DNA of 64,000 nucleotides from Bugula neritina (GCA_964035545.1 OZ037767.1:31636628-31700627); one strand, 5' to 3'; shown: positions 2,896 through 26,411, counted from the first letter of the stretch. The notes: generated from the letters alone by a model not told the origin. Made by a program: numbers and translations.

Positions 2896-3015
2896 ACATG
2901 CGTGAGTGTGTGTGTGTTTTAATAATATATTACTATTACATACTCATAGAAATTATATAGTTAGTGCATACAAAATTGTCATCATGTATATCCTGTGTCT
3001 TACTCATGACTGAAA

Positions 3016-3530: not shown

Positions 3531-4845
3531 ATGAACAAGCAAGCAGTGTGCATGGTCTGTACCCTTGTTCTCTGCTCTATCATTACGACCAGTTGGACTC
3601 AGTCATACGGCTACGGCTATGACTATGGGTACGGCTATGACTACTATGCGTCATATTTTGAGCATGAATGTTCTTTTCAAGACTATCAACGCCATGGAGT
3701 TTCGGATGCCTCCACGTGTTCAGCAAAACTATCCAGCCATATCGTTAATGTTGTATGCAATGGTAACCCGTTCATCAACAAGAGGGCATGTGAGCACTAA
3801 CTCTATATTTATAATGCAACTATAAATGTTGTGAGAAAATATGAAAATGTTGTAAATAACTTTCATTATTGTTTTCAGCATTGTGGAGGAAATTCTATCA
3901 AATATTTTACTAAAGGTCCTCATCTCGGGCAGAGGCTTAACTTGGCATTTCTCAAATTAATGGAGTCCCCGAATGTTTTAGCTAATAAAAGGACTCTATA
4001 AGCCAAATTTATGAAATTTATTATGATCCAAAGAGTTGTGATTCTGCATATTATAGCACGTAAAGCGACATTATTAACAAGCTCTTCCAAGCTGATTGAG
4101 AAAATTCAACTACAAATTCTTTCCTGTACAGTAATTACATGTGAGTTGTAAATGGCAAAAAGTCATCATGGAGTCTGGCATCTGGCAAACATGAAGTTTA
4201 ACTGCAGTTTTTAGGCAATAAACAGATTTAAAATGTAGGAAAATAAAAGACTTGAAGTTAGAAGAATTGATCAATGTTTGTTTAACACATATGCATGTCT
4301 TTCCTATTATAGTCGATGGTGATTCCAAGAGCCAACCAAAAGTTAGCCGAGACATCTTTGTGTCTAAGAATCACTCTAATGAGTTTTTTAATCCAAAGAG
4401 AAATGAGCATGAGATGTCTGCATATGGAGTAGTATGCGAGTGCTGCATAAACCCATGTACTATGAGCGAGATGCAGGCTTACTGTGCTAAGAAACGGAGA
4501 AGGCGATCTGCCCACCAGGGAAGTACTCCTATCTACACCAGATCTATGCTGGAAGAGTTTCAACAACTTACTTCTTCCTCTCCTTCTCTTAGTTTGCAAG
4601 ATTTAGCCCAGTCCCCATTGGTACAGGCATTAAACCAGCAGAAGATCAGAAACAGTCAGAGAGAAGGCAATTCCAAACGAGAAGACAACTCCTTTGAATA
4701 CAGCGACTCGACTGAAGTGCTACCAGAAGGCGTGGACAAATATAACCCTGATGAAACGACTAGCAGATCTCCTGGACAGAAACTTTTTACAAAAAAAAGT
4801 AGCATACTTCGTAGGATATGGCAAGCTCTCACTGAGAACTATTAA
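3531..4845 (+). CDS. Insulin-like peptide precursor 1 (mollusc MIP/Aplysia-insulin type, 8 Cys) with long C-terminal extension; exons 3531-3789, 4313-4845; 263 aa
   Basis: Signal peptide MNKQAVCMVCTLVLCSIITTSWT; B chain ..FEHEC..TCSAKLSSHIVNVVCNG..KR; phase-1 intron (T|gtgagc ... tattatag|TC); C peptide ending FFNPKR; A chain GVVCECCINPCTMSEMQAYC (CC-X3-C-X8-C plus extra Cys); KKRRRR, then extension. Confidence 0.93.
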
Positions 4846-6315
4846 AATGTTATATAAAAATCTCTTTAAAATCTTGTTTTGGAAAATTATTAAAATATTC
4901 TTTGTTCTTTGTTAAACTCATTTTTTTAAAAATTTAGTTTTGCACTTCAATCTCAGTTTTTGTTTTTTCTCAATTATTGCATTTATTCCCATAATTATTT
5001 AATATTATTTTAGCAAGTTGTAGCACATATACAGCGAATTATTGTTCAATCAATTTTGTTTGTACTACATATAGATTGCTATTTGCATTTGTTGTATTGT
5101 ATAAATTAAATAATATAGTAGATAATTGCTAGTAGACTATTTGTTAGAATTGTTTCTAATACTCATAATAACATCAATAGATAGAAAGTGATGACAACTC
5201 CATAGTTGTTTTTCACCCAGTGAATGTGAATTCTTGACTTCCACTAGTAGAATTTTCAACTTGACAAACTTTAAGTAACGCTTTGGTAGCTAATGCATTA
5301 TATTTTAGACTGCAAAAGGTCCTTTATTGCTCAGAGCTGGCGCCAGACATAGTCTACACTCTACTATATTGTAGACTCTAGGCAGCATATATAATATAAT
5401 ATGAGTTTACGTCAGCTAACTGGAGTAACTAGAAACTAAACTAAACACATCAAAAGCAAAGATTAAATATAAAAAAGAAAGCAAATACACTAATGAATTT
5501 TTCATGATAGGAAGACAACTTACACATAGTAGTGAATAAATACTAGCTATAGAATTAGTAAAATAATTCCTTGCATTTTTCAGTTTGCTAGCTAACCAAC
5601 TGTAACTTATAGGCCATAGGGCATAGTATGTAATATAATGTGTTGGAGTTAGCTTTCCTTACTTCTATGATTGTAAAATCATTAATATGTTTATTATGGT
5701 GCTTGTTGGAACTATAAGTAGTTGGTAGCAGCTACCCAGTTCCATAATCTTTTCTATATAGTCCAACAACTCAAAAATGCTTGAAATGCTTTGAGTATAC
5801 TAGTTAACATAGTGTACAAGATTGAGATTTCTAAAAATTAACTACAAGTCAGTTTTATTTCAATAGTTTAGCAGTTGCAAGCTATTGTAAAACAGTTCCA
5901 GTTCTTGAGAAGAAATTTTTTACACAGTTACTATTTATATGTGGTTACTATTTATACATGGTTACTATTCATACATGGTTACTATGTCATTACGACAATT
6001 TTTTATTCATATTTGCTTTCTCTGGTAACATCTTTTAAAAAAAAAAAATAATAATTAGAAAATAACTGAAATACTGCGAAGCCACAAAGCCACTGATAAG
6101 TGGTGGTCAATTAACTCAAAGAGGTCTGCAGGCCTTGTTATATATTAGCTAAACTGAATGAGCCCGGAGTAGATGTGAGCATTGCCTGCCCAAGTAATGA
6201 GATAAGGAGATGTCTATAGTATGATGTGTTGTGGTAGTACAGAAGAGTCACAGACACTTGGCAAGTAAACAAGTTGATTAGATCTCAGCACATTAACTTC
6301 ACTGAAAGACGACCA

Positions 6316-6323
6316 TATAAAAG
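6316..6323 (+). promoter_or_regulatory. Putative TATA box of ILP2 (TATAAAAG)
   Basis: Consensus TATA; Inr-like catcactt ~28 nt downstream; donor cat|gtgagt at 6386; acceptor tttcag at 6720 before ATG 6744. Confidence 0.6.
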
Positions 6324-6743
6324 CAGTCTGACCACCAGATAACATCACTTGTATCCACCCTAACATGCTGATGGACAGCACACATGTGAGTATGTCTTTT
6401 AGCAGCCGACAGTCTGCTTCATATTGAATATGGAAATAAAAATAGGTTTGAAAATTTGACTAATAGTTTGACTGTGAGTTATTGTAACAAAATTTGAAAT
6501 TGTTTAGGCCATCTTTGATCAGAGTAATAGAAGTTAATTGGGAAAGTTGTGAATCTGTCATAAGATACTGAATAGACAGAATATGTCAGGCATGCTTGGC
6601 TATGGGTGTAGTGTAGCTATTTGGTTACAAGTAGGCCTACTATATTATCATTATGCTGTTTATTATATCATATAATTTATATTCATTGTGGTATGTTATT
6701 CCACTTTTATTGAATTTCAGTTGTGAAGGCAGCATAGAGCGGA

Positions 6744-7533
6744 ATGTTCGTTAGGTGCTTGATATTACTGCACTGTGTACTTTCTGGTGTTGTCTCCCTT
6801 GAAAGAATATGCCATATAGATGATCGGTCTAACAAGGACCCCGGGCTATGTAGAAGGAGACTGCAGCTATATCTCTCCAGGATATGCAATGGAGACATAA
6901 CTCCAACCAAACGCAACCACTTCACAGGTACGCTTCACAACAGTATTGTTGGAAACTATGAAACTAAACTCTACTAGATGATTTATTGTTCATGTAGAAT
7001 CATGTGGCATTCTGAAATGCCAAGTTTTGAAAAACTGAATCAAAGCAAATCTAAGGAGATGTTTAGGATGATAAACAAACTGTTTATGGTACACAAAAAT
7101 CTAATTCGAATGACATATTGTTTATAATTCAGAGCAACTCAGTGAGAGCGAGCAGAATCCGGCTACAACAAATCCGATTTCCGGTATTTCTTCCAGCAGA
7201 GAAACAGCTAATGCCTTCTTAAACCATTCTAAACGACAGCAGGCTGAGAGTGACGATGCTGACATGTTTAGCGGCATAATCTGTGAGTGCTGCTTCCATC
7301 CATGTTCGGAATATGAGCTAAGTGAATATTGCGGCAGCAGGAGGCGGAGAAAGAGGTATACGAGCCAACAGATTGAAGAGTTTGAAGCTCAACTCAAATC
7401 GCTCCCAAAATATCCCACTTTTGAGCAAATGGCCGCCTCACCAGCTGTTCAAGCATTGAACAGGCAGAAGAGAATAAACGTGACGCAAAGAGATGAAGAT
7501 GAGACAGCAACGTCTGCATCTAAGTTCAGCTGA
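6744..7533 (+). CDS. Insulin-like peptide precursor 2; exons 6744-6927, 7133-7533; 194 aa
   Basis: Signal MFVRCLILLHCVLSGVVS; B chain LERIC..GLCRRRLQLYLSRICNG..KR; phase-1 intron G|gtacgc ... aattcag|AG; C peptide ..ANAFLNHSKR; A chain GIICECCFHPCSEYELSEYC; RRRRKR plus extension; AATAAA at 7741. Confidence 0.93.
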
Positions 7534-8524
7534 CTGAGTCATGTCTTCTGAGAAGGCGTGGCTATAACTTCCCCATATGAATACAAGTATGTCAAGTTCA
7601 GCATGACAAGTGTAGTATTGTCAGCTTTGTCATGCCTTCAAACATTGGATAAACAGTTGAGAAACAATTGAAAAAACAGCAGATCAAAGACAGCAGCTGA
7701 TAGACTAGCTTAATTATGTTGTGGTTAATGTCTAATAAGAAATAAACAACTTGTCAATAGAAAAACCTGTTTGTTTCTGTAATATATAACTACAAATATC
7801 TATTTGATTCACTGTATTGTAAGACTAATTATTCAGTTTAACTTTCTGAGTCTACAAATTAATAAGAAAAAAGTAAAACTTGTAAAATAAGAAAATATAG
7901 CTAAAAAAAGTTCACTTATAATTAACTGTAATGATTACATTAGATATATCAACATTGTAGTATAACATCGTAATAGCGTAATAAGAATATTCATATTATT
8001 ATGGTCATGTAGAAGCCATTAATTGACATTTATTTATGAAAGAAAAACATGAATAACAGCAAAAATTCTCTCCATCATTTTGAATACAATAATACTGATA
8101 TTTTATGTAAGTACTTGAAGACAACCAAATGCCAATTTCAATGTACTTCTACTTGCGGCAGTTCTTTCCCTATCAGTATTGACATCAGTGGGCTGACAAG
8201 AGAAGTTTAATTCCAATCTGGCAGCAACTTTAGTCTGGCAGCCAGCTGACACAATAGGATTTTCTTCAAGACACAATAGAGAGAGAAGGGGGGGGGAAGG
8301 GGTGTAGGGACTGGACTTTGATGTCACTCTCACGTGTGTACTCTCAGGCTCTTTCTTATCTCAGCTGCCAAAGGATATGCAATAACTCACAGCTCACAAA
8401 CCAGTGTTCAGATTTTTGTTTACTTCATGTTGGCCGCTGTGCTGTGATAAGAAGTTAAATACAAACCTCATATAAGTCAAACACCCTAAAATAGTTATGT
8501 AACAACAAGCTGCTAAACTCTGAA

Positions 8525-8625
8525 ATGTCTGTCTGTCTGTCCGCCCGTCTGTCTGTATGTCTGTCCATTTGTCTGTCCGTTCGTCTGTCCGTTCGTCCGT
8601 CCGTCTGCCTGTCTGTATGTATGTA

Positions 8626-8660
<35 letters not shown>

Positions 8661-8665
8661 TTGTG
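8525..8665. repeat. (CTGT)n-type tetranucleotide microsatellite
   Basis: Visible gtct/gtcc repeats. Confidence 0.9.
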
Positions 8666-10829
8666 TACAGAGGGACAATAACACTTTATCTATCTAGTTC
8701 TATCTGGTTCTATATACGCCGGAAGTCATGGTAGAAAATGACAGCTGACTAAGAAAGCAGCACCCATCAAGTCATCTTTGTGTCAATAAGACTTCCAGCT
8801 TGCCAAACTTGGCAGAATGTTATTGGATTTTTGTATTTGTCAGAGGCCCTTTTGAGGGTTCTACAGAGGCCTCTTTTAGGTAACTCATACAAGGCATGTG
8901 TTCACCATAGCCACCTCTTTCTCCTCCTAAATTCTGCCACATTGTTAACATTCTCACCCAGTCTGTAGACTGCTACTCTGCACTGTACTGCGTTGCATCT
9001 GTTTACATCAAAATATTTACATGTCATCATTGTTTAGCTGCCTTCCAGTATTTCACATGTTTGCAAGCTACTAAACTATTTTCAATGACAAAACAATGTA
9101 CACTTATTTCACCAGCTTCTGTCCAAGTAATGCAACTCCTATGCCTATGCCTGTGGTATTGGTATTAAAACAGAGGTATATATACAGCAACATCACCGCA
9201 TGTACAACTTCTGAACCCCAGGCTTTACTGCTGGAATATCTACATAACTGAAGACACAACTTATATCCACTAAACTTAGATCAGGTGTGAAGCAGATGCA
9301 GAAAGGGAGGAATTTGAATAGGTATTTTATTAAGAGGAAATCTACTGAATGCTCCCCCACACCCCCCCTCTCGCCCCCTCCCTCCTCCCCTTCTGTTGGA
9401 TTAGTCACCTCTGTATTTGCTGCTCTGTAGAAACCTAGGAGTACAAGCAGCTGCTAAATTGGCTAGACTGAGGTCCAAAACTTTAACATATTATGTTAAA
9501 TTGTTTGATTTTAACATTTAACCCATAGCAGCACTAACTGAAGGTTTCAACTTTTGATCCAATATTCTCAACAATTAATGTTCAAAGATTAATTAATTCT
9601 CTAAACTTCAACATAATATCTTGAAATTTCTTTATTCAAGTTTTTTCATAAAATCCATTCATCAGTTCAAATTTCTTAAAATATAATATGTAATATAAAA
9701 TATATAATACAATTCTAGAACAATATAAATATTATATTATTGTATTTTCACCAACATCAAACAGTGCTGGTATTAAATAACAGAACTTCAAATTTACAAC
9801 CATGTTCACTGAACCTAATTTTTCAAAAATTAGTATATCGGATGTGAAGGACCTAATTCTGCCATGAATTAGGTGAAATTAACGGGTAGGATTTGTTGTT
9901 TTATTACAAATTTTGCATTTTGCTTTAATTAAAATAATTTTCGGATAGTTAATTATAGTATAGTAGTATTCAATTTTAATAAATATTATAAAAGCTACAG
10001 CCAGAAGATTTATGATTATAAAGATTTCTACTTTTGTATCTACTTATATGTTATAGCGATTATTTAGCTTACTTAAAGATTCTAACAAGCTTTGTAAAAG
10101 CCAAGTCATTTGTTCATATAATATAGTTGAGTTTAAATGTTTAATTCCTATCAGATGGCAAATCTGATAGGAATTAATATGTTAATCAGATAAACTAATT
10201 ATGCCATTGAAAAGTTCAAATAACTATTAGCGAGTGAATTAAGAATTCCGTCACATACTTTTTATAAATGGGTATTTGGGAAATCCGGTAAGGAAATGAT
10301 AATCACTTTGATTCGAAACAATGTCTAGCATTTATGTATTGTTACATTATACTATATCACAATACAATGTCTAGCACTTGTGTGTTGTTACTTTGTATAC
10401 TATATTATAATACAATGCTGATTAAAGCACATGTATCAATAAAACAAATAAACTAACTTGCTACGAAAAGTGGCATGACAAGTTATAATATTAGTAACAG
10501 AATAAATTTGCAGCAGAATATTTTGATATTTGTCCTTTTCTACTGACAGTTAGTCTAAAGTTTAAACTAATAATTATTGTGAGTTGCAGGAGCATACAAC
10601 TCCATTATTGCACCAGCTTTACCAAAGTCACTATATTATATTACATTCAATTTACTTCACTACAAAAGCATCATTTTACTAAATTCTTCTCAAATCATAG
10701 TTTTGTATAAAATTAATAAACAAATGAATATAGCTATATTATAGTAAAAGTATTTGCTGTATTATATTGGCGGCGTAGCTATATTATAACAGCTAGTATT
10801 AAGGCTATGTTATATTGTCATACTTTCGT

Positions 10830-10967
10830 TATATTATATTATATTATATTATATTATACTATATTATATTATATTATATTATATTATATTATATTATATT
10901 ATATTATATTATATTATATTATATTATATTATATTATATTATATTATATTATATTATATTATATTAT
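10830..10967. repeat. (ATATT)n pentanucleotide microsatellite
   Basis: Visible. Confidence 0.95.
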
Positions 10968-11914
10968 AGTACATCTTCATAATGTATTATTATAAGATTT
11001 AGAGAATATTAAAAAACAATTAAACATAGATGTACTCTATTTTGAAATAATAACATTGAATAAACTTTGCTGTTACCGGAAAAATACCTGATTTCATACG
11101 TGTATTTGTATTACAGCAAAAAGGAATTACGAGTAGTACGTTCTTCTTGTCAATGACCGCTAAAGGAAACTAACCCTGTGTAAGGTCTTTTCAACTGAAC
11201 CAAGTTAGCTCATTTGAAACTTTATAAAGAATCATTAAAGACTTGGCTAGTTCTTTACTTACTTGAAGAAAATGCAAATCAGGACATTTTACAATATAAT
11301 TATATAGATATATAGTATGTGTATGAAACATATATTATATTGCATCTTCATCTCATATAGTTTATATATTTAACAGCATATTTCAAGTTCTTCTTTACCA
11401 TATAATTTGGGTATAGCTAAGCTAACATTTAGCTGCAGTAATTATACCCTTAGCTTCAAAGTGTAGCCAGTCTCGGGATCTTACTTAGCCTCAGAACCTG
11501 GTTACATAATATCTGCTTGCTCATTGGTCAACTTAGTGGTCTGTGTAACTGCAGAGGTCTCTGCAGCTACCATGTAAGCTTTCTAAATATATTATACGAG
11601 ACAAATCACTGTACACTGTCAACTATATTCTATTGTGTAAAGAGCAAAATTGTCTGTTATAATATTCTTTCAAGTGAAATTTACACTCAAGTAATTACTT
11701 CATAGAAACTGTATGAATCTTGACTTGAGCATAAACTGCACTATGTTTCACATAAAACTGTAGGCTGCCCAAAGAGCTTGAGCAAAACAATAAACTATAT
11801 TGAAGTAATTATTACAACTCCTTGTTTATTCTGTAAGGCTTGTGAGTAAATCCTTCAAGATTAAAATGTTATTTTGAAATTTAATATCCTAAGAAGGTCA
11901 TTTTACTTTTAGAA

Positions 11915-13192
11915 ATGAAATATGAATTTGCAATACTATTCTTGAGTGATAATAATTTGGTGTATGTTTGGAGGCACTTCTGCTGAAGAATACAAAGTGT
12001 GTAGTATCAAAGATTCCCCAACCCCAGAGGAATGTGTGGGGCGGAGGTTTTCAAACAGATTTATGCAATATGCAATGGAAACATATATTTCGCTGGCTCT
12101 CTGACCAGCCCAGGTAAACCAAATGTTCAGCCACATGCATCTCTGTAACTTCACTATAGCCAGAGTGGTATCTATACCAGCACTGCTAGCACTAGTTTGT
12201 ATGGCTGATGGTGAAGCTAAAGAGTTGTCTTCTATTGTGGCAAAGAAGCAACCATGACTGAATTCCCTTCTAGCTAACATCACCAATAGTCTTAGCTAAC
12301 AACCAAAACTAATAGTTAATACCCATAGCTAATAACCAAAACTAATACTTAATACCCATAGCCAATAACCAAAACTAATACTTAATACCCATAGCCAATA
12401 ACCAAAACTAATACTTAATACCCATAGCCAATAACCGCTAACAATAACTGACAACTAAATTAATAAAACAGAACTGATTTATTGCCACCACTTTATGATT
12501 ATGTATCAAGCTGAGACCTTCACTTCTGGTGTCAAAGATTTAGAGCAAGTGTTGTCACAAAATCTGTCACAATTGCTGTCACAATTTCTGTCGCAACTGT
12601 TGCCACGTGTTATAAAGTCAAGCTACATCTGTACAGATATTGTGTAGTTACTATAGACTAATGTCTGTAGAGGATTAAATATTTCTTTTTGTTGAGATTC
12701 GTGATGGTTTGTTTAAAACTGTGTTGGTGGTCTTTTATGTTAATGATCAAGTCTGTGCAAATATAATGGAATAATCTATAAAGAGTCATATTGACTGTGT
12801 TTATAGTAACATTCATACTTTCAGACCGGAAAGCAATTCAGCCCCAAGTATCTGATATTTCCTCCAATAGAAATGCTGCTAATTCGTTCCTAAGTCAATC
12901 AAAGCGCCAGTTTGAGTATTTGGAGGATGAGCGAGATGCCAGAATGATGGGGATCTACTGCGAGTGTTGCATCCGTACCTGTACCTTAGAGGAAAAGCAA
13001 GAGTATTGCGGCAGCAAGAGGCGGAGAAAGAGGTCAGCCAGCAAACTGGTCAAAAGGTTTGAAGCTCAACTAAAATCTCTTCCAAAATATCCTACTTTTG
13101 AGCAAATGGCCATCTCACCCGCTGTTCAAGCATTAAACAGGCAGAAAAGAATAAACGTGAGACACAAAGGGATGAAAATGAGACAGCAGTAA
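11915..13192 (+). pseudogene. Insulin-like peptide 3, frameshifted (probable pseudogene or assembly error); exons 11915-12113, 12825-13192
   Basis: The ATG 11915 frame stops at 11984. Removing one base near 11945 and adding one near 12015 restores MKYEFAILFLVIIIWCMFGGTSA-EEYKVCSIKD.PNPRGMCGAEVFKQIYAICNG, with donor G|gtaaac at 12114. The second exon has an intact A chain GIYCECCIRTCTLEEKQEYC. A further 2-nt insertion near 13160 shifts the tail relative to ILP2. Confidence 0.8.
12290..12435. repeat. 33-bp minisatellite in the ILP3 intron (atagccaataaccaaaactaatacttaataccc)
   Basis: ~4 visible copies. Confidence 0.9.
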
Positions 13193-15594: not shown

Positions 15595-16482
15595 ATGAAG
15601 GAGAAGACACTGGCCATCTTGTCTTTCCTCTGTACAATAATCACATTGAGCTTTGCCGGCTTTGAGCAGACGTGCTATATAGAGGCATATTACAGCAAAA
15701 GTGCCCAGTCCACACGCCATTGTTCTGCACGGTTGACCAACCGAGTAATGCAACTGTGTAACAACCAGCCATATATTAAAAAAAAAAGAGGTACTTAATG
15801 TATCTATTTAGTTGTTGTAAGTTCTAGCGATTACAGACATTACATAACACAGGAATAGCTTTTGTTCTTAATGTGGAAAACAATATTACCTTCACCTGTG
15901 ATTTTCATCGCTTGTTCCACAGGCTATTCTGGTCAAGGGGATGCCATGACATACGGCTTTGAAGACATTTTTCAGCAAGAGGAGAGCTCAAACATGCTTC
16001 TAAAGAGAAATAGAAGACAGATGAATAATCAGGGAATCGTCTGTGAATGCTGTATGAACTCGTGTAGTTTGAATGAATTACTGGAGTATTGTGCCACGAG
16101 ACGCAGGCGCAGATCAGTGAAACAGCCAAACTCTCCTTTTTATACCAAAGCCATGCTGAAAAACTTTACTGAGTTAGTATCTTCGGCCCATACTCTGAAG
16201 GATTTAGCTGAGTCTCCCTTCGTACAGGCTTTAAATCAGCAGAAAATTACAAACATACAGAGAGCAGGTAACTCTAAACGAGGCTCAGTTGGCTGGGAAC
16301 ACAATTCGAATGGCATGCAAGAAGCAAAAGACTCTACAGAAAATACAGCTGATTCATGGGTAGACTTAGGTCCTACTATGTTGCCAGGGAAAGGTAGCAC
16401 TGAGGCTGTGTGGGGTCATGATGAGACAGAAAAGGAGGAGAAGCGCTTAATGGATAAAATATGGAGCATTTTGTTCAATTAA
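15595..16482 (+). CDS. Insulin-like peptide precursor 4; exons 15595-15790, 15923-16482; 251 aa
   Basis: Signal MKEKTLAILSFLCTIITLSFA; B chain GFEQTC..HCSARLTNRVMQLCNN..KKKR; phase-1 intron G|gtactt ... ttccacag|GC; A chain GIVCECCMNSCSLNELLEYC; RRRRR plus extension. Confidence 0.93.
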
Positions 16483-17307
16483 AAAGCTAAAAGTGAGTCT
16501 TTACAAAGGTTGAGTGTTCAAGGTGGTGTCACACAAATCTATTGCACATTAGTTCAAGTGTGGACGCAGTTGAATAAAACTATATAAGCTTTGACTTTTC
16601 CATGCTATAATTTTAATATTTTATGTTATTTGTTTTATTAACATTTATTATGTTTGTTTTATTGCATTATAATATGTATTATGATGTATTGCATTAGTAA
16701 TTATTGTATTACTTTATTACTTTTACTGTATTGTATTATTTATTCTATCGTACCTGCCAACATATACTCAACATTCAACAGCAAATTCGTTGTTAAATTT
16801 GATTTTAATTTTTTTCCTGTTTCATATGTGTCAGTAATATTTCAGTGAAATAAAATATATCAATATAGTTTATACTTGTAATAATTAAATGCAGTTCGCA
16901 TGTGCTCCATAGAATTTACTTTGAACATAAAATGTGGTTTGGAGTCGTCTAATTTGTATTTATGAGCTTGAATATGCAATTTGGAGTCACCTGATCTCTA
17001 TTACATCTCTATTATTGATGGGCTTGGTGTTATTGATTTGACTTTATTAGTAGATGATTCACATTCTCTGCTATAATCAAATTCACTTTCTGATTAGTTT
17101 AAATAAGTTTTCTATGACTTTGTAATCACAACAGAGTGATGCAGTTTCCTATAAAGACAACTACGGTTTAAACTTTAAATGAACAGTCCATCAACTAACT
17201 TCACTAAACCAATAGATAACAAAATCAAATTGATCAAAAATTGTTGCAATGGATTAGCTGATAGCTTGTGAGAGTTTTGCCTTCAAGTAAATCACATTTA
17301 AAGCCGC

Positions 17308-17999
17308 ATATGAGATGCTAAACTTATATTGTATAAGTACGTATTCAAACAGAACCTACCATGCAGCATAAACCCTCATATGAGATGCTAAACTTATATT
17401 GTATAAGTATGTATTCAAACAGAACCTACCATGCAGCATAAACCCTCATATGAGATGCTAAACTTACATTGTATAAGTACGTATTCAAACAGAACCTACC
17501 ATGCAGCATAAACCCTCATATGAGATGCTAAACTTACATTGTATAAGTACGTATTCAAACAGAACCTACCATGCAGCATAAACCCTCATATGAGATGTTA
17601 AACTTATATTGTATAAGTACGTATTCAAACAGAACCTACCATGCAGCATAAACCCTCATATGAGATGCTAAACTTACATTGTATAAGTACGTATTCAAAC
17701 AGAACCTACCATGCAGCATAAACCCTCATATGAGATGCTAAACTTACATTGTATAAGTACGTATTCAAACAGAACCTACCATGCAGCATAAACCCTCATA
17801 TGAGATGCTAAACTTATATTGTATAAATACGTATTCAAACAGAACCTACCATGCAGCATAAACCCTCATATGAGATGCTAAACTTACATTGTATAAGTAC
17901 GTATTCAAACAGAACCTACCATGCAGCATAAACCCTCATATGAGATGTTAAACTTATATTGTATAAGTACGTATTCAAACAGAACCTACCATGCAGCAT
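17308..17999. repeat. 60-bp minisatellite, ~11.5 near-identical copies
   Basis: Unit catatgagatgctaaacttaYattgtataagtacgtattcaaacagaacctaccatgcagcataaaccct-like, repeated in near register. Confidence 0.95.
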
Positions 18000-18114
18000 C
18001 AAAGTAGCTGATTTGTCTCTCCACGCTGCTCTGTTTTGTTGAGCTAAGAAATTGCATAGCTTCACATGGCTTTACACACTAATGCAGTGTTTTTCAGCAA
18101 TTAACCTTTCATCT

Positions 18115-18330
18115 ACTGACACACAGTATACTGTCGTACACAGTACAAGGTGACACACAGTACAAGGCGGTTCACAGTACAAGGTGACAGTATACTGACA
18201 CACAGTACAAGTTGACACAAAGTACAAGGTGACACAAAGTACAAGGTGACACAAAGTACAAGGTGATGCACAGTACAAGGTGACAGTATACTGACACACA
18301 GTACCAGGTGACAGTATACTGACACACAGT
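18115..18330. repeat. Composite minisatellite (acacagtacaaggtg / acagtatactg)
   Basis: Visible; it explains the C/V-rich minus-strand ORFs. Confidence 0.85.
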
Positions 18331-19128
18331 AATTAGCAGCTGGACCTGCACATATATGCTTAAAAAGCATTAAGGGAAGATAACTCCAATCACTTGAAGG
18401 ACTGCTCCATACCATAATGCTGCAGCCAATTACCAACAAGTTTCTGTTTACTCAAAGTTTACATATAAACTACTTTCAACTAACTGGTCTCCCACTTTAA
18501 GAACCAAAAGTACTGGCAACCAGCTACTCAGCAGAAAACTTCAACCCCAAAGAAGTAACTTCTACAGGTACTCTAGGCAAGTAAAGGAAACACACATCTA
18601 CAGGTAGGTACTGTAAACAAACAACTACTAGTACAATAAATAGATTATGTAAATTTAACTGCAAGTGGTTTATTAATTAGACTTGCAGACAGTAACTGTG
18701 AGAGTTACTCTAAATTTAATACATTTTATCATGTCCCTACCTGCAGACTTGCACCAGTAACTTGAACAAGTAACTCGCTCAAAATTTTCAAACTCTATAG
18801 TGTATAATTGTGGCATATACATCAATAAATAGGTTTCTAAGGAATTATTGTTGTTCTGTAGTTACTGCTTTTTCATAGTCCCTGCTTTTATATTGTACCA
18901 TGAAATATCTTTATTTAGGATAAATCTAATAGGAGTACTACGACATCATATAGTATGTACTATAGCATAATATATATATATTATATATAATACTTTATGT
19001 GATGTATAACATATAGGTAAGTAATATGACATTACAATGAATATAATGAAAATATATTTGTTATTATAACATATTATTATAGCTGATAGTACAACATTAT
19101 ATAATATATGTAAAATAATTGGTGTTTT

Positions 19129-19302
19129 GACATAGCATATGATATATAACATAGCATATGATATATAACATAGCATATGATATATGACATAGCATATGAT
19201 ATATAACATAGCATATGATATATAACATAGCATATGATATATGACATAGCATATGATATATAACATAGCATATGATATATAACATAGCATATGATATATA
19301 AC
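19129..19302. repeat. 19-bp minisatellite (atagcatatgatatataac)
   Basis: ~9 visible copies. Confidence 0.9.
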
Positions 19303-20348
19303 ATACATGCACAGTCTATTTATATTTAGTGTAGTATAGGTCATGTGATATATTGTATAATAGTATACGATATATTTAGATTTTATAAAGGACAAAACTT
19401 TAATGAATTGGACTTTTGCCAAAACCTAGCATACCTTGGAAGATTAGGAGAATTTTACTTATAAAAGGTTCAGTGACAATAACTGTTGAGATAACTTTAT
19501 GATAACTTTACCATAACTTTATGATATTGTTAGACTGATCAGCTATGTTCCTATAACAGAAGTGTATTACAGTAAAGTTTGAAATTTAAAGAAATGATAA
19601 GGTCGGCATCATATTATTATAAAGATTTGTGACAAAAACTGGTGGTTATCCTATTCTACCCAGACTGTCCTCGGACTAAGGTCTTTGCTGCGGGCCTGTA
19701 AGTTCGCAATGTGTGGTGTAATAGTGTCTTCCTTCTATTTTTTACTTCATGTTGAACAATGTTTGCGCTGCCTCACCTGTCCTTCAACCCATTAAAGCAA
19801 AGTTACGAAAATAAATAACAGCAATGACTCTTCAATGTAACTGCATAACATGATCAACAGTGCCAACTCCTCATCAGATTTAGCCAGCGTGTTGCTCATT
19901 TTTTTATAAAGCTGAAGAGTAAACAAGTTTTTGTTGTTCCAAGGAACAATACTATTTACTTTGTCGGTTACGATATGACTAAGAATCCAGGACGAGTAGT
20001 TACCCCCCCCCCCTGTGTCACAGCGCGCAGTGTGTCACAGCACGAAGTCTGTCACAACATGCAGTGTGTCATAACACGCAGTCTGTCACAACATGCAGTG
20101 TGTCCAGTGAGTAGTGTGAAGCTGAACGTCTGATAACTTGACCTCTTTACTTCCTGTTGGCCTAGTCAATCTCTTAGTGGAGGTCAAGGCAAGCTACAGA
20201 CTGACTTTACTCAGGGATATGATTTGCCTTGTCTAAGATCTTTTTCTGATAGCTTGTAGCAATACTCTGTAGGCTAACTGCTGACTATTATTTACTAGCT
20301 GCTGCCTGTCTTGCTATGACGGTCTTCTGCTGGTTTTGTAGACAGAAG

Positions 20349-21515
20349 ATGAAGTGGAAGGAGGTATTATGTTTCATGTACTTCACACTGACGAGTGCCA
20401 GCTACGGAGGGTTTGAGCACACCTGTGCCTACAATGACTACATGAACGCATCACCATCTCGTAGAGTTACCTGTGGCAGAAAGATCCCAATCTTTGTCTT
20501 TCATTTGTGTAACGGAGCCGTCAATGTAAAGAAAAGAGGTGAGCTTGTTGTTAGCAAAACAGGCAAAAATTGTCTTGCGTTTACAGACTTTCTTTGGGGT
20601 TGTTAGTATCAAATATCTGTGAATTAACATAATTTTCATCAAATAGTTGGATAGTGAAAAAAGTTGTAATAAAAACAGACTTGCTATATTTATTTACTAT
20701 TAAATCAAGTACGAATAAACAAATGGGCATGTACTCGAACAGCTTTTTGTAACCCAAACTTACACCAAGTTGGTTTAGATAACTGTTAAATATCAATACA
20801 AGCAAGTTGTTAGTAAAGTTTCACTTAGATATATAACTTGAATAAGCTTATATAGAAGCGGATGTTGGAAAATCCCAGTCAATGATTCATTGATGTGAAA
20901 ATCTATTTGGTGGTTACAAATTGCTTTCAGTAGACATGGAATGTGGCATATGTTATATAATGAGTGAAAGAGGAAAGCAGGTTAACCACAAAGGCCGGAG
21001 GGAGGGGTAAGGAATGATAGCAATCTGTTTGTTGATAACATGTTCATTCTTATTTGGCAGCTGTTTCACCTGAGCCAAGTCAAGTTCAACGACCAGTATT
21101 CATCAAAGGACAAACACACAAACCTACTAATTCACTCTCTAAATTTACTACTTTACACAACATATTCCAGCTGAGGAAGACAGCAAACACTTTTCTTTCT
21201 TTAAAAAAGAGGGCCATACGTTTTTATGACGACCATGAATTAGATCTGACCCAAGGGATTGTGTGCGAATGCTGTATTCACAGTTGTACAATACTGGAGT
21301 ACCAGGAGTATTGCGTTCCGACAGGGCAGCGAAGGGCAGCGAGAAGGAAGAGAGAGACTTTCTATACGGACACACTTTTGACTGAGTTTGAAGAAAGATT
21401 TGACAACTCCGAAACACCATCCTTAATTGAAATGGCGCAAACACCTCTATTTAGAGCAATGAACTCTCAGAAGATTTATAACTTGAGAAACTCTTTAACT
21501 GATGGTGGAGCGTAG
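20349..21515 (+). CDS. Insulin-like peptide precursor 5; exons 20349-20538, 21061-21515; 214 aa
   Basis: Signal MKWKEVLCFMYFTLTSASYG; B chain GFEHTC..TCGRKIPIFVFHLCNG..KKR; phase-1 intron G|gtgagc ... tttggcag|CT; C peptide ..ANTFLSLKKR; A chain GIVCECCIHSCTILEYQEYC; RRKR plus extension. Confidence 0.93.
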
Positions 21516-21989
21516 AGGTCGTTGATTATTCTAACAGTCTCTAAGATAGAACTGGAAGGCTCGTCTACTTGTCTGAATTAAATATTAAATTAGAAGGTTT
21601 TTCTAGTAAGAAAACCACCAATATCAGTGTGTGCAGTAGCTTATAGAATAACCTCTTTCAACTATATTTAGGTTTATTTATCTATTTATTCGTTTATTTA
21701 TTTTTTAAGTTATACATCAAGTGTTTATTTACTATATTTATGTAGTATACAGTGAGCATTAAACTACATGTCATATGCAGTGTTTTACCACGACTAAGTT
21801 TAGGTTCTAATAGGTAATTTCATCACATGTTAATGTATGCAACATTAACTTAAAACTGCCATATATATATTGCACACTGTATTATTTTTAATCGAAAAAA
21901 CTATTTTATATTATTTATTTTCAATTCATTTTTAAATTGTAGATTTTTTAATGTTTCAATAAATGATGTATTCTTTCACCAAACTTTTT

Positions 21990-22275
21990 ACCAAATATAA
22001 GCTTTACCAAACAATTATATTATATACAATATCCAATATAAACTCTACCAAACAATTATATTATATACAATATGCAATATAAACTTTACCAAGCAATTAT
22101 ATTATATACAATATCCAATATAAACTACATACCAAGCAATTATATTATATACAATATTCAATATAAACTTTACCAAACAATCATATTATATACAATATTT
22201 AATATAAACTTTACCAAACAATCATATTATATACAATATCCAATATAAACTTTACCAAATAATTATATTATGCAA
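21990..22275. repeat. ~39-bp AT-rich minisatellite
   Basis: Unit tttaccaaacaattatattatatacaatatccaatataaac, ~7 copies. Confidence 0.85.
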
Positions 22276-23814
22276 TACTAAATAATATAGATTATACCAA
22301 ATGATCATCAGTTTACGATTTTGGTATGAATTACGAGGCCTTTAGTTAACCCTTTGCACCTTGGAAGTACACTGCTAAAAAAACTTAGTAAAACAAGAAA
22401 GTGTACACCCCTGAGACAAGGTCAGCATGCTGGCTCTCTGGTCACATGACTGCTGCCGGATATGTTTTCTTTTCTAATTAACATGCAAACAGTCTGCAGC
22501 TCCAAAATAATATTTTTTCCACGTGTGTTTATGCAAAAACAAAGGATCTAAAATCAAAATATTTTCTAGAATCTGGGATCCTTTTCCCCTGAGCTGTGGA
22601 AATGAGCTATATATATATATAGCTTTATTCAATATTTATAAGTTCAAAATGCTGTACCATATTATATTATTATACTGTATTATGTTCTACTACACTATAA
22701 TATTATAAGTTTAAAATGATGTACCATATTATATTATTATACTGTATTATGTTCTACTACACTATAATATTATAAGTTTAAAATGATGCACCATATTATA
22801 TCATAATAGTGTATTATGTTATATTATATTATACTATACTGTATTATATTATACCATATTATTATATTATTACTCTATATACTCTGGAGAAGGGATAACC
22901 TTACTATTCTATTGTCACTGTTATTGAAGTTGAATAGTTTTAGATAGTTGAACAGTAGCTGTACTGATTACATAATAATTTGTTTACCGTGTTAGACAGT
23001 TTATCGGCAGCTCACAAACTGGTTAGACTACAGACTAATTTAGGTAGACACTACGCAAGTTGCTGGTGACTTCATCACTAATCAACATGTTTACAAATAT
23101 GATAATTACATAGAAAAATATAATAATTATACGAATTCATGCTTTTGAGCCACATTTTGTATACAGAGACAATAAAACAAATAAGCTGCAAACATTGTTT
23201 AGTAGGCAGTTTGTCTGTGGCAGCTGTCTGTGGTAGTGAAATGAACATTTGGTGGTTAGTATAATGGGAATTAGAGTCAAATTTACCTGCCCATTATTGT
23301 AGGTTCACTCTCCACACAGGATTATAATTTTCTTTCCTCTCTTTCTAATAAGTATATCCCTGCTATAATAAGCTTTACATGGTAACCATTCATTATGTTT
23401 GCAAGAAATCTTAGGACTTGTAGTTTAGCCTTTTTTGTAGAACAAAATTTGGTTGTGGACATTTTGGCAGGAATGAATTAACTTCATTTGCTTTTTATGA
23501 CAAATTACTAAGCTTTTTGGCTTGCTTTGAGTCATAGCTTATATGTTGAAGCTTGTATCCAACAAGCCACTGGTGATGTGTACTCAGTTTCTAGCATGAT
23601 ACTTGGTCCGTCTATATAATTTGAGAGGGCAACTCTCAGGAAGTAACAAAAGTAGTTATAATAGAAATCAATACCTGATATGATAACTCTCAATGAGTGA
23701 ATTTATTCAATACATTTAATGAATCACAATTACAATATCCATCTATGTACACTAACTTGTGTCAATGTTCGTCATCTTGAAAATTGTATATATTTACAGC
23801 AATAAAAATGTCAA

Positions 23815-24094
23815 ATTCTATCTGCCAGAACTAGTATGCCAGGTTCTATCTGCTAGAACTAGTATGTCAGGTTCTATCTGCCAGGACTAGTATGTCAGGT
23901 TCTATCTGCCAGGACTAGTATGTCAGGTTCTATCTGCCAGGACTAGTATGTCAGGTTCTATCTGCCAGAACAAGTATGTCAGGTTCTATCTGCCAGGACT
24001 AGTATGCCAGGTTCTATCTGCCAGGACTAGTATGTCAGGTTCTATCTGCCAGAACAAGTATGTCAGGTTCTATCTGCCAGGACTAGTATGTCAG
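23815..24094. repeat. 28-bp minisatellite (ggttctatctgccaggactagtatgtca)
   Basis: ~10 visible copies. Confidence 0.9.
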
Positions 24095-24992
24095 TGCTGT
24101 GTCTTCCATTGAGCATTTTCTGGAATACTGCAACTATGACTTATATATGTAGAAATTGTCTGCCCTATTCAATGTTGCCAGTTATTTCATTGGTGGAAAA
24201 ACTAAGAAATTAATGAAGTTCAATATTTCATATTTTAGTTACAAGTTGCGACATGCATTGCTTTAGTTTGCCGAAATTGTTATGGAAATACAAGATGTGC
24301 AGACAATCTGTAGTTTATCTTCGGTGTTATAATACAACATATATAACATAAGTAGATGATAAAACATATACTATAAGACAACATAAAAATAAAAGACTGA
24401 TATAACAAAATTATTTCTTGTTTTGTAAAATGGTGCCACTAAAAGGACTTCAAAGTGCAAAGCTTCTGTGAGACAAAACTAATATTATCCCAAACCTCTT
24501 AATTTTACACATTTTAGTTTAAAATACAAACTCAGTTGTTAGTTAACATAGTGTAGAGTTAGTAAAGAGTTAGTGTAGAGTCAATATAGGACATTTTGGC
24601 AGCGCTGTCATCCCTACACACCTCCACACATGCTGATATCCAATCAACTGGATAATTAAGTTGCTGGCAGCATCTAAGACTAAAAATAATATCTGGAGAG
24701 TATGCGTAGCATGTGGCATTGCTGACACTCAAGCAGCAGCCAAATTACTGGCAGCAGCTAAATTACTAGCAGCAAAATTGTAACGACTCAACTCATTGTG
24801 TACAATTCCTAAATTCTACGACCTGCATATGTACGACCACATTCATCTTAATAATGTTTGTGTTGGGCCTGCTAACTTCGTCTAATATGAGAAGTGTAAC
24901 TTAGTTGGCACATATCACCCTTTGTCACTAATGCCATAATAACACTTCTTACACAATTATATAATAACTCGTAATGAACGATTAACTAATCC

Positions 24993-25094
24993 TGATTGGA
25001 TAAGAGAAGGTGTGGCCCCGCCCCTTCTCATTGATTGATTTCATCCGTGAGAGGTGGGCTCACATTCCTCACTGGGAAAAAACTATATAAATAG
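24993..25094 (+). promoter_or_regulatory. Putative core promoter of ILP6: inverted CCAAT (gattgg ~24994), GC box (ccccgcccc ~25016), TATA (tatataaata ~25084)
   Basis: Canonical order and spacing, followed by a non-coding exon ending aaaag|gtaagg (~25260) and acceptor ttgtag at 25435 before ATG 25443. Confidence 0.6.
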
Positions 25095-25442
25095 CTGCGA
25101 GTCTTGGAGTCTGTAGCATTAAAATCCCTGCTCATGCCTAGACGTGCTCGAAAAATGCACACAGCAGTTTCCTTGCAATAATCTATATTATATTCTGCTG
25201 GAATAAGATAGCAACTGGACTTTGCTTGTTGAATTTTCAAGTTCCAACTGTAATAAAAGGTAAGGAATGAAAATTATATAAATTTCATTAAAATGTATTT
25301 TTGAAGTAAATTAGAAGCATATTCTCACAGAAAATTCTACGCATAAATTGAGATTTCAAACATTAGTCAATTTTAATATACATTGTAGATATAAAATAAA
25401 TATGTGTATAGGATAATATTTATTATACATTGTAGATATAAT

Positions 25443-26411
25443 ATGGATATGAGTATGGGGTACTACCTACTTATGCTGATGTTGTGCTGCCTGTTGGTGG
25501 AAGAAGTTGAAGCTGACTTTGAGCATACTTGTGCTAGCGATGACTTCGCTAGAAGCGGAGCTTACCATAGCTGTGGCTCCAGGCTGACCTCGCTAGTGCT
25601 GAGTAAATGTGACGGGAATCCCTACCTAGGCAACAGAAGTAAGTTTCTGTTCACTGACTTTACTTACTCTTCTTTAGAACTCGACTGAAGAAGAGTTGGT
25701 GTAGTGAATAAACAACTACTGCAAGAATAAAGTTTTTGTTATTGATATTTTTAAATTTATTATCAGAATATATAGGAACTTATACTGAAAGCTTGTTTAC
25801 ATAAATGCTTACAACGTAAATTTATATTTGCAGGAAAAAGAGACCTTGAAAAAATATCACTAACAATGGAATCCGCAAACTCCTACCTTCGACCTAAAAG
25901 AAACTACGAGTATGTCGCAACTGGCATGGAAGTGGGCATAATCTGCGAATGCTGCGTCAACACCTGCACGATACGGGAACTCGATCAATACTGTGAGAAC
26001 AAGCGCAAGAAGAGATCAGTGAGAGAGATTCTGACTCCCACACAAGAGAGCAAGACCTACTTCTCAGAGAAAGATGTGGAGAAGTTCTACGAAGAGTTGA
26101 AAGAGTTGCCAGAGTCGAAGGAAAACGAAGAAGAAAGTCTGCCCACGAGCCTTGAAGAGTACGAGACCATCGTGGCACTCGACAACATCAAGCGTAAGAA
26201 CATCGCGATGAAGCAGATGTATTTATCACAAGCAAATGAAGTCAATGGTGCCGTTATGTCAACCAATAGCAAAACCAGACAAAATACTAACTCGAATAAA
26301 CAGGCTAATATTAGGATTTTCTCGACAATCATATCTGGTATGCCACCATCAGACCACAAACACAGACACAAACACGACAAGCGCCATTTAAAACACAGGG
26401 AGAAAGTATGA
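25443..26411 (+). CDS. Insulin-like peptide precursor 6; exons 25443-25638, 25834-26411; 257 aa
   Basis: Signal MDMSMGYYLLMLMLCCLLVEEVEA; B chain DFEHTC..SCGSRLTSLVLSKCDG..RRKR; phase-1 intron A|gtaagt ... tttgcag|GA; C peptide ..ANSYLRPKR; A chain GIICECCVNTCTIRELDQYC; KRKKR plus extension with a His/Lys/Arg-rich tail. Confidence 0.93.

What the first reader, a model, noticed from the sequence alone, without database searches (positions are those of the whole stretch)
4489..26210. Unrecognised conserved ~45-aa domain after the A chain in all six ILP precursors: candidate co-released peptide or pro-domain
Seen: after the last A-chain Cys, each precursor has a furin/PC-type polybasic site (KKRRRR, RRRRKR, KRRRKR, RRRRR, RRKR, KRKKR) followed by an alignable Cys-free segment. 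ILP1 YTRSMLEEFQQLTSSSPSLSLQDLAQSPLVQALNQQKIRN; ILP2 YTSQQIEEFEAQLKSLPKYPTFEQMAASPAVQALNRQKRIN; ILP3 SASKLVKRFEAQLKSLPKYPTFEQMAISPAVQALNRQKRIN; ILP4 YTKAMLKNFTELVSSAHTLKDLAESPFVQALNQQKITN; ILP5 YTDTLLTEFEERFDNSETPSLIEMAQTPLFRAMNSQKIYN; ILP6 (most divergent) YFSEKDVEKFYEELKELP...LEEYETIVALDNIKRKN. Established: MIP-type insulins usually end at or shortly after the A chain (Aplysia has a short D peptide), and IGF E-domains are poorly conserved. Inference: the hydrophobic periodicity suggests a 2-3 helix module cleaved off and co-secreted, acting as a second bioactive peptide, a folding chaperone/latency domain or a sorting module. This would be a two-component precursor type I do not recognise.
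Basis: partly seen in the sequence, partly recalled or inferred. Interest (0 to 1): 0.9.

Follow-up and report, generated by a model that had tools for sequence, protein, structure and literature searches.

The report
Conserved cleavable tail on bryozoan insulins
Every detectable insulin-like hormone gene of this moss animal (a bryozoan close to Bugula neritina, not a mollusc) encodes a conserved, helical, roughly 45-residue segment after a furin-type cutting site behind the A chain, resembling the E-peptide of IGF precursors in position but with a sequence that matches no described domain.

Summary
Six tandem insulin-like peptide (ILP) genes lie on the + strand. In each, the last exon runs past the A chain through an R-x-K/R-R site into an alignable, Cys-free segment.

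The genome is a bryozoan collinear with Bugula neritina at 80-88% nucleotide identity. Four of the six genes are orthologs of B. neritina ILP transcripts published in 2016. That paper ends chain A at the first basic pair and does not discuss what follows.

The extension is real coding sequence and is constrained:
- The B. neritina cDNA-derived BnILP-A protein is collinear with the genomic frame to the stop.
- Pooled dN/dS against B. neritina is 0.155 for the extension core, 0.134 for the A chain, 0.55 for the B chain and 0.66 for the tails.
- All 10 A-chain exons in this genome carry the extension.
- A profile search found 36 protein clusters spanning A chain plus extension. Named ones are from Bugula and Watersipora.
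- One Lys is invariant (43/43) and one Asn nearly so (41/43).
- AlphaFold2 gives a confident three-helix unit.
- There is no Pfam, PDB-sequence or fold match.

Reading: an E-domain-like pro-peptide released by a furin-type convertase. Its function is unknown; precursor handling is slightly favoured over a second hormone. It is a new variant of a known kind. The scan also noted this stretch as s1-472407.

The parts
3531..3789 (+). ILP1 exon with signal peptide, B chain and start of the C peptide; phase-1 donor at 3790
   Evidence: ORF and donor scan. The junction agrees with the B. neritina BnILP-F chain C listed in PMC4990251.
4435..4485 (+). ILP1 A-chain Cys core
   Evidence: PF00049 at 29.9 bits
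4486..4533 (+). ILP1 polybasic furin-type site plus linker
4534..4653 (+). ILP1 conserved extension core (40 codons, helices 1-3)
   Evidence: Alignments A1/A3/A5. dN/dS 0.12 against the ortholog. AF2 pLDDT 87-95.
4654..4845 (+). ILP1 tail: a conserved KR site about 9 codons after the Asn, a disordered acidic stretch, a C-terminal amphipathic helix, and the stop codon
   Evidence: tail dN/dS 0.98
6744..6927 (+). ILP2 signal peptide and B-chain exon (end inferred from the B. neritina cDNA junction)
7282..7332 (+). ILP2 A-chain Cys core
7333..7356 (+). ILP2 polybasic site
7357..7479 (+). ILP2 extension core (41 codons)
   Evidence: dN/dS 0.04
7480..7533 (+). ILP2 short tail and stop; a 2-nt indel relative to ILP3 shifts its frame, and the B. 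neritina ILP2 ortholog (P0004) ends in the ILP3-type frame
11946..12104 (+). ILP3 B-chain exon region, split over two reading frames by a 1-bp deletion in a C run near 12019
   Evidence: Contigs from run X1 at depth about 121 are identical to the window here.
12959..13009 (+). ILP3 A-chain Cys core
13010..13033 (+). ILP3 polybasic site
13034..13156 (+). ILP3 extension core (41 codons)
   Evidence: dN/dS 0.16
15595..15790 (+). ILP4 signal peptide and B-chain exon
16042..16092 (+). ILP4 A-chain Cys core
16093..16140 (+). ILP4 polybasic site plus linker
   Evidence: dN/dS 0.09
16141..16254 (+). ILP4 extension core (38 codons)
   Evidence: dN/dS is 0.19, while the B and A chains of the same gene are at about 0.77.
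16255..16482 (+). ILP4 tail with a KR site and a C-terminal amphipathic helix, then the stop
20349..20538 (+). ILP5 signal peptide and B-chain exon (the exon junction is ambiguous)
21264..21314 (+). ILP5 A-chain Cys core
   Evidence: PF00049 at 20 bits, below the cut-off
21315..21362 (+). ILP5 linker with two basic sites
21363..21482 (+). ILP5 extension core (40 codons); the stop ends at 21515
   Evidence: dN/dS 0.09
25443..25638 (+). ILP6 signal peptide and B-chain exon; phase-1 donor at 25639
   Evidence: matches cDNA-derived P0003
25944..25994 (+). ILP6 A-chain Cys core
25995..26057 (+). ILP6 polybasic site plus linker
26058..26201 (+). ILP6 extension core (48 codons, the most divergent)
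   Evidence: dN/dS 0.30
26202..26411 (+). ILP6 tail ending in a His/Lys/Arg-rich stretch, then the stop
   Evidence: Collinear with the B. neritina BnILP-A cDNA protein P0003 to the stop.

Best explanation
The segment is a true protein-coding, lineage-conserved C-terminal pro-domain of bryozoan 8-Cys insulin-like peptide precursors. The precursor is laid out as signal, B chain, C peptide, A chain, furin-type site, extension. The extension therefore sits where the E domain sits in IGF precursors. Shown: it is translated in frame with the A chain in one exon. It is present in all 10 A-chain exons of this genome and in a second cheilostome genus. It evolves under purifying selection as strong as that on the A chain. 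It is predicted to form a small three-helix unit. Its hallmarks are a conserved aromatic/acidic first helix and a last helix with an invariant Lys and a near-invariant Asn three residues later. Inferred: a furin-like or prohormone convertase cuts at the R-x-K/R-R site in the secretory pathway, and carboxypeptidase trimming leaves an A chain ending 1-2 residues after its last Cys in five of the six genes (ILP5 has two basic sites, so its A-chain end depends on which is used). A free peptide of about 45-60 residues is then released in equimolar amount with the hormone. In the ILP1/ILP4 type, a second conserved KR site separates off a long tail that ends in an amphipathic helix. The same few residues are kept across paralogs whose hormone chains differ widely, and they stay fixed even where B and A chains evolve fast. 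The domain therefore most likely works through one partner shared by all paralogs. My split is about 45% a role in handling the precursor (folding, granule sorting or condensation, or processing), about 30% an independent secreted signal, and the rest other roles.
For: Coding and unspliced: the cDNA-derived BnILP-A (P0003) and BnILP-C (P0024) proteins are collinear with the genomic open frames to the stop. No conserved donor lies at the end of the core.

Constraint: pooled dN/dS is 0.155 for the extension core (95% CI 0.085-0.264, 248 codons), 0.134 for the A chain, 0.55 for the B chain and 0.66 for the tail. dS in the core is 0.275, which is at background. Fisher tests give p = 0.0007 for core versus B chain and p = 0.0002 for core versus tail.

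Breadth: this genome has 10 loci, and every PF00049 hit is among them. Of 70 profile hits, 36 span the whole module, including Watersipora subatra XP_067947270 and XP_067946457.

Cleavage motif: 48 of 48 members have R-x-x-R and 47 of 48 have K/R-x-K/R-R. The residue after the site is Ser in 30 of 48. The furin consensus is taken from PMC8286064.

Invariant residues: Lys in 43 of 43 and Asn in 41 of 43.

Structure: the core has pLDDT 87-95 with helices at residues 12-24, 30-34 and 37-58. In full-length Watersipora P0015 the same helix is the most confident part, at 93-94.

Independence from the hormone sequence: in ILP4, B plus A chains run at about 0.77 while the extension is at 0.09-0.19, p = 0.0055.
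Against: There is no direct evidence of cleavage, secretion or any activity. No RNA runs exist for this species and no peptidomics was found. The dN/dS values rest on one species pair and short regions, and the per-gene values are noisy. The taxonomic range is established by name only for two cheilostome genera; the other hits are unnamed contigs. The AF2 models have low global confidence (pTM 0.31-0.38), so how the helices pack against each other or against the insulin core is unknown. The test of binding to the insulin core could not be run. The choice between precursor handling and a second hormone rests on argument, not on data.
Confidence: 0.7

Rival explanations
1. The released extension is itself a hormone or neuropeptide-like signal with its own receptor, co-released with each insulin.
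For: It is constrained as strongly as the A chain. It stays conserved where the B and A chains of the same gene diverge fast, in ILP1 and ILP4. It is bounded by convertase-type sites, including a second conserved KR in the ILP1/ILP4 type. It has a confident autonomous helical fold.
Against: Ten paralogs would all release near-equivalent ligands carrying the same invariant residues, which fits a shared cellular partner at least as well. At 45-60 residues with a folded core it is large for a co-released peptide. There is no receptor candidate, no peptidomic detection, and no homolog outside ILP precursors among 1.84 billion proteins.
Confidence: 0.25
2. The extension is not removed. It stays on the A chain as an IGF-like D-domain or tail that tunes receptor, binding-protein or matrix binding, and the basic tract acts as a matrix or heparan-sulfate anchor rather than a cleavage site.
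For: Echinoderm and hemichordate IGFs have long charged C-terminal extensions without obvious convertase sites (PMC8286064). The ILP6-type tails are rich in acidic and then His/Lys/Arg residues.
Against: A K/R-x-K/R-R motif is kept in 47 of 48 members, mostly followed by Ser. That is the furin consensus and is much more basic than needed for an anchor. Dibasic sites also flank the C peptide, so these are processed two-chain hormones. PMC4990251 likewise predicts that chain A ends at this site.
Confidence: 0.1
3. The similarity among the six segments is only a legacy of recent tandem duplication or gene conversion and carries no function.
For: ILP2 and ILP3 are 83-90% identical in nucleotides from the basic site to about 30 nt past the Asn codon, but only 50-65% identical upstream. 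This looks like a past conversion tract.
Against: The same pattern is present in B. neritina, so any conversion predates the species split. Synonymous differences have accumulated while replacements have not. The module is kept in paralogs on three chromosomes and in Watersipora. A quick tree places a Watersipora member in each of the two main groups.
Confidence: 0.03

Closest known systems
Bugula neritina insulin-like peptide precursors BnILP-A to BnILP-F (Wong et al. 2016, PMC4990251; GenBank KX095881-KX095886)
   Same: They are direct orthologs, read from the chain sequences in that paper's Table 2 set against the ortholog alignments: BnILP-A matches ILP6, BnILP-B matches ILP3, BnILP-D matches ILP2 and BnILP-F matches ILP1. 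The loci are collinear at 80-88% nucleotide identity. The deposited proteins contain the extension.
   Different: The paper describes a B-C-A structure, ends chain A at the first basic pair and does not mention or analyse what follows. ILP4 and ILP5 are not among its six transcripts. BnILP-C and BnILP-E lie on other chromosomes.
E domain of vertebrate pro-IGF-1 and pro-IGF-2 (definition in PMC8286064)
   Same: It lies C-terminal to the A/D region and is removed at a K/R-x-K/R-R furin site in the secretory pathway. It is basic-rich and is released alongside the hormone.
   Different: There is no sequence similarity (no Pfam hit). IGFs keep their C domain as single-chain molecules, whereas these precursors have dibasic sites on both sides of the C peptide. 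IGF E domains are encoded by separate, alternatively spliced exons, whereas here the extension shares an exon with the A chain.
C-terminal extensions of arthropod IGF (aIGF; Veenstra 2020, PMC7357564)
   Same: These are invertebrate insulin-family precursors with long extensions after the last Cys that 'look similar to one another' and contain an Arg-rich part.
   Different: aIGF extensions are encoded by two extra exons with alternative splicing. Their Arg-rich part often carries two Cys, and they occur in one specialised paralog. Here the extension is Cys-free, lies in the same exon, and is present in every detectable paralog.
Tails after the A chain in annelid, nemertean and brachiopod 8-Cys ILPs (Capitella ELT95556 and ELU03087, Lineus XP_064628879, Lingula XP_013416474)
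   Same: They share the 8-Cys framework. Read by eye from the sequences, they also share a C-peptide end motif. A KR or RKR site lies shortly after the last A-chain Cys and is followed by 20-60 further residues.
   Different: Only the A chain and basic site align to the profile, at positions 1-30. Profile comparison of the tails gives no relation, with probability below 1%.
Proinsulin C peptide (PMC2478623)
   Same: It is a non-hormone part of the precursor that aids folding, sorting and processing and is co-secreted in equimolar amount. This is a working analogy for the favoured function.
   Different: The C peptide lies between the B and A chains, is short, is poorly conserved and is largely unstructured. 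The extension is terminal, conserved and predicted to be helical.

Membership tests
Insulin/IGF/relaxin superfamily (Pfam PF00049) | Profile match above the gathering score | tested here: met
   Five of the six exon-2 translations score 23.3-29.9 bits against a cut-off of 23. ILP5 scores 20 bits.
Insulin/IGF/relaxin superfamily (Pfam PF00049) | A-chain CC-x3-C-x8-C and B-chain C-x11-C cysteine framework | tested here: met
   The A motif is present in all six genes. The B motif is in one frame in five. ILP3 has it split by a 1-bp deletion.
Lophotrochozoan 8-Cys (molluscan-insulin-type) ILPs | An extra Cys two residues before the A-chain CC and an extra Cys near the start of the B chain | tested here: met
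   C-x-CC is present in all six A chains, and an upstream B-chain Cys is present. The motif definition is from PMC5996578.
IGF-type E domain | Lies C-terminal to the A/D region behind a furin consensus site | tested here: met
   K/R-x-K/R-R lies within 22 residues of the last Cys in 47 of 48 family members.
IGF-type E domain | Is actually removed in the Golgi or in granules | not testable with these tools
   This needs peptidomics or expression experiments. There are no RNA or protein data for this species.
IGF-type E domain | Sequence homology to known E domains | tested here: not met
   No Pfam family matches at E up to 10 on the six translations, or up to 1 on 43 extension sequences. There is no PDB sequence match.
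IGF-type E domain | The host molecule is a single-chain IGF with an uncleaved C domain | tested here: not met
   Dibasic sites flank the C peptide in the window genes and their orthologs.
Arthropod IGF extension (PMC7357564) | Extension encoded by additional, alternatively spliced exons | tested here: not met
   A chain and extension form one open frame in all ten loci and in the contig ORFs from other species.
Arthropod IGF extension (PMC7357564) | Terminal consensus motif described for aIGF | not tested
   No explicit motif scan was run. The 1.84-billion-protein profile search returned no arthropod protein that covers the extension.

The most novel reading that the evidence does not exclude
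Every bryozoan insulin gene is a two-hormone gene. The helical extension peptide, with its invariant Lys-x-x-Asn helix, would be a previously unknown secreted signal with its own receptor or binding protein. It would be released one-for-one with insulin-like peptides and would be specific to Bryozoa.
Probability: 0.25. Interest if true: 0.8.

Novelty: new variant of a known kind. Interest (0 to 1): 0.55.

Why it matters
Insulin-family precursors are usually read as B-C-A, and whatever follows the A chain tends to be ignored. That is what happened for these genes in 2016.

Here the ignored part is as constrained as the hormone's A chain and is predicted to fold on its own. It is found in every detectable insulin gene of the genome and is shared by two distant cheilostome genera. 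This gives a defined, testable pro-domain in a phylum whose endocrinology is almost unknown.

It also adds a data point to the debate on whether C-terminal extensions (IGF-like precursors) are ancestral in the insulin family (PMC8286064). If the peptide proves bioactive, or proves necessary for granule sorting, it would be a new component of insulin biology. B. neritina larvae are an established settlement model, so the question can be addressed at the bench.

Tried and rejected
- **RNA evidence.** No RNA run holds this stretch; only one DNA run does, X1. Expression and splicing could therefore not be checked in this species. Read laying was used on 1.5 kb for the ILP3 frameshift only.
- **Splice donor at the end of the core.** Only ILP2 and ILP3 have GT there, so this idea was rejected.
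- **Pfam on the extension.** Nothing consistent was found.
- **PDB sequence profile.** Only chance-level hits appeared, with E at or above 0.12.
- **Fold searches with the ILP1 extension model.** Foldseek found nothing at E up to 0.001, and VIA-align's best Z was 3.7 on generic long helices.
- **Profile comparison with tails of Lineus, Capitella and an unnamed ILP.** No relation was found.
- **Third word-indexed search with the 48-sequence profile.** It added no named taxa.
- **Naming the species behind ENA/Logan hits.** Only sample codes were obtained, one of them labelled BRYA16-1.
- **A coordinate script with several typed peptide motifs.** Coordinates were derived instead.
- **Joined precursor models.** None was built or searched. 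All window exons were handled exon by exon by reference, and full-length work used database proteins P0003, P0005 and P0015.

Full report
**What is there.** The window carries six tandem insulin-like peptide (ILP) genes on the + strand. Each has one exon for the signal peptide, B chain and start of the C peptide. A short intron follows, phase 1 wherever the junction can be read; the ILP5 junction is ambiguous. A second exon holds the rest of the C peptide, the A chain and a continuing open frame. After the last A-chain Cys, each frame reads a polybasic tract, a short linker in four of the six genes, and then an alignable Cys-free segment of 38-48 codons ending at an invariant Asn. ILP2, ILP3 and ILP5 stop 10-18 codons after that Asn. 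ILP1, ILP4 and ILP6 continue for 63-69 more codons. A splice donor at the end of the core is not conserved, because only ILP2 and ILP3 have GT there.

**Whose genome.** A profile of the six second exons instead hits Bugula neritina proteins: the BnILP-A precursor and two genome-annotated proteins. The window is collinear with B. neritina contigs at 80-88% nucleotide identity, including introns and spacers. The organism is therefore a bryozoan very close to, but not identical with, the sequenced B. neritina. Wong et al. 2016 (PMC4990251) cloned six B. neritina ILP transcripts. From the chain sequences in their Table 2, set against the alignments, BnILP-A corresponds to ILP6, B to ILP3, D to ILP2 and F to ILP1. 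That paper describes a B-C-A structure and ends chain A at the first basic pair. The rest falls under 'preprotein sequence' and is not discussed. ILP4 and ILP5 are not among those transcripts.

**Is the extension really coding?** The cDNA-derived BnILP-A protein (P0003) is collinear with the genomic frame of the ILP6 ortholog through to the stop. The cDNA-derived BnILP-C (P0024) ends in the same module as its counterpart in this genome. I compared the six genes codon by codon with their B. neritina orthologs, exon by exon, using Nei-Gojobori counts with bootstrap.

| Region | Pooled dN/dS | Note |
|---|---|---|
| Extension core | 0.155 | 95% CI 0.085-0.264, 248 codons |
| Basic site plus linker | 0.19 | |
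| A chain | 0.134 | |
| B chain | 0.55 | |
| C peptide (second exon) | 0.37 | |
| Tails | 0.66 | CI reaches 1.13 |

dS in the core is 0.275, which is in the range of the other regions, so the constraint acts on the protein. The core differs from the B chain (Fisher p = 0.0007) and from the tail (p = 0.0002) but not from the A chain (p = 0.83). In ILP4 the B and A chains run at about 0.77 while the linker and core are at 0.09-0.19 (p = 0.0055). ILP1 shows the same tendency.

**How widespread.**
- In this genome (216 Mb), the A-chain-plus-extension profile finds ten loci: the six here, three on another chromosome and one on a third. All have the basic site and the core in one frame.
- A Pfam insulin scan of the whole genome finds eight exons, all among those ten, so no detectable ILP lacks the extension.
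- Against 1.84 billion representative proteins, the profile gives 70 hits at E up to 0.001. Of these, 36 span the profile to position 74 or beyond.
- The named hits are further B. neritina ILPs and two 'uncharacterized' proteins of Watersipora subatra, another cheilostome genus.
- The remaining hits are ORFs on short ENA or Logan contigs, one from a sample labelled BRYA16-1. They again carry C peptide, A chain and extension in a single frame.
- A quick, weakly supported tree puts one Watersipora protein in each of the two main groups. The module would then predate the paralog radiation.
- Hits from Capitella, Lineus and Lingula cover only the A chain and basic site. These proteins also continue for 20-60 residues after a KR site, but profile comparison shows no relation to the bryozoan module.
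- The idea that such insulins end at the A chain holds for the molluscs I checked in the literature (PMC5996578, PMC11275868). It is not a general spiralian rule.

**Anatomy of the module.** In a 48-sequence family alignment, all members have R-x-x-R within 22 residues of the last Cys. Forty-seven have K/R-x-K/R-R, the furin consensus as given in PMC8286064, and the next residue is Ser in 30. In the 43-sequence extension alignment, one Lys is invariant (43 of 43) and an Asn three residues later is nearly so (41 of 43). They are framed by conserved hydrophobic positions. An earlier helix carries a conserved aromatic pair in an acidic, amphipathic setting.

AlphaFold2 on the ILP1 extension with this alignment gives pLDDT 87-95 for residues 11-50. 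It predicts helices at 12-24, 30-34 and 37-58, then a disordered stretch, then a C-terminal helix at pLDDT 83. In full-length Watersipora P0015 the Lys/Asn helix is the most confident part of the model (93-94), while the insulin core scores 50-70. Global confidence is low (pTM 0.31-0.38), so the packing is not established.

Two tail types exist. The ILP1/ILP4 type has a conserved KR about nine residues after the Asn and ends in an amphipathic helix. The ILP6 type ends in a His/Lys/Arg-rich stretch. The extension has no Pfam match, no PDB sequence match and no fold match.

**How it most likely works.**
- Shown: the segment is coding and constrained, is predicted helical, sits behind a conserved furin-type motif, and is present in every detectable paralog.
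- Inferred: convertase cleavage and carboxypeptidase trimming yield a normal two-chain hormone plus a free peptide of 45-60 residues, in equimolar amount.
- Weighing the function: the same residues are kept across paralogs with very different hormone chains, and they remain fixed where B and A chains change fast. This argues for one shared partner rather than a paralog-specific interface with the hormone. I weigh a role in precursor handling (folding, sorting, condensation or processing, by analogy with roles reviewed for the proinsulin C peptide in PMC2478623) slightly above an independent secreted signal.

**Comparison with known systems.** In layout this is an E-domain arrangement, as in IGF precursors, the amphioxus ILP and the arthropod IGFs whose extensions 'look similar to one another' (PMC7357564, PMC8286064). 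The Cherif-Feildel data set already tabulates D and E domains for invertebrate ILPs (PMC6321970). The differences are these:
- The sequence is unrelated.
- The extension shares its exon with the A chain.
- The host molecules are processed 8-Cys two-chain hormones, not single-chain IGFs.
- The extension is present in all detectable paralogs rather than in one specialised gene.
- It has a structured, strongly constrained core.

I therefore class it as a new variant of a known kind. It is unannotated and undiscussed, but it is present in public sequences.

**Limits.**
- There are no expression or peptide data for this species.
- dN/dS rests on one species pair.
- The named taxonomic range is two cheilostome genera.
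- Spliced, joined precursor models of the window genes were not built or searched. Work was done exon by exon by reference, and database proteins were used for full-length analyses.

Noticed in passing
window 11946-12104 (C run near 12019): The ILP3 B-chain exon has a 1-bp deletion in a C5 run relative to both B. neritina haplotigs. This splits the B chain over two reading frames. Contigs from run X1 at depth about 121 agree with the window, so it is probably real in this individual. ILP3 may be a young pseudogene, yet its second exon still looks constrained (dN/dS 0.13-0.38).
   Followed up: partly
window 7480-7533 versus 13157-13192: The ILP2 tail carries a 2-nt indel relative to ILP3, and the B. 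neritina ILP2 ortholog ends in the ILP3-type frame, so the residues after the invariant Asn are read in another frame here. This suggests the short tails are not constrained. ILP2 and ILP3 are 83-90% identical in nucleotides only from the basic site to about 30 nt past the Asn codon, which looks like an old conversion tract.
   Followed up: partly
window 15595-16092 (ILP4) and 3531-4485 (ILP1): The B chains of ILP1 and ILP4, and the A chain of ILP4, diverge from their B. neritina orthologs at dN/dS 0.76-0.94 with all Cys kept. This could be relaxed constraint or positive selection on the hormone itself.
   Followed up: partly
C-peptide ends just upstream of each A chain, e.g. window 4380-4425, 7200-7270, 25860-25930: Read by eye, the last part of the C peptide carries a conserved Ala-Asn-x-Phe-Leu ... 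Lys-Arg type motif. It is shared by all paralogs and, in looser form, by annelid, nemertean and brachiopod ILPs seen. It may be a processing or folding element.
   Followed up: no
G000 C7:11211818-11223419 (L012-L014) and C6:12124662-12124925 (L015): Four more ILP genes carrying the extension lie on two other chromosomes. A cluster of three (BnILP-C type) ends 4-8 residues after the invariant Asn. One gene (BnILP-E type) has a His-rich tail.
   Followed up: partly
window 20500-21170 (ILP5 intron): The ILP5 exon junction is ambiguous. The phase-1 donor after the dibasic site needs an acceptor with a poor pyrimidine tract, while a phase-0 donor/acceptor pair would skip the dibasic site after the B chain. 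No cDNA is known for this gene.
   Followed up: no
window 2480-2900; 36600-37300; 50494-51324; 61900-63450: There is a long (TG)n microsatellite upstream of ILP1. Several long tandem-repeat blocks read as open frames in more than one frame, some of them inside introns of the neighbouring gene.
   Followed up: no
window 59289-60299 and 61877-63451, minus strand: From their translations, these exons look like the C-terminal region of a dynein heavy chain. A possible dioxygenase-like exon lies near 57224-57400 on the + strand. Neither was checked against a family library.
   Followed up: no
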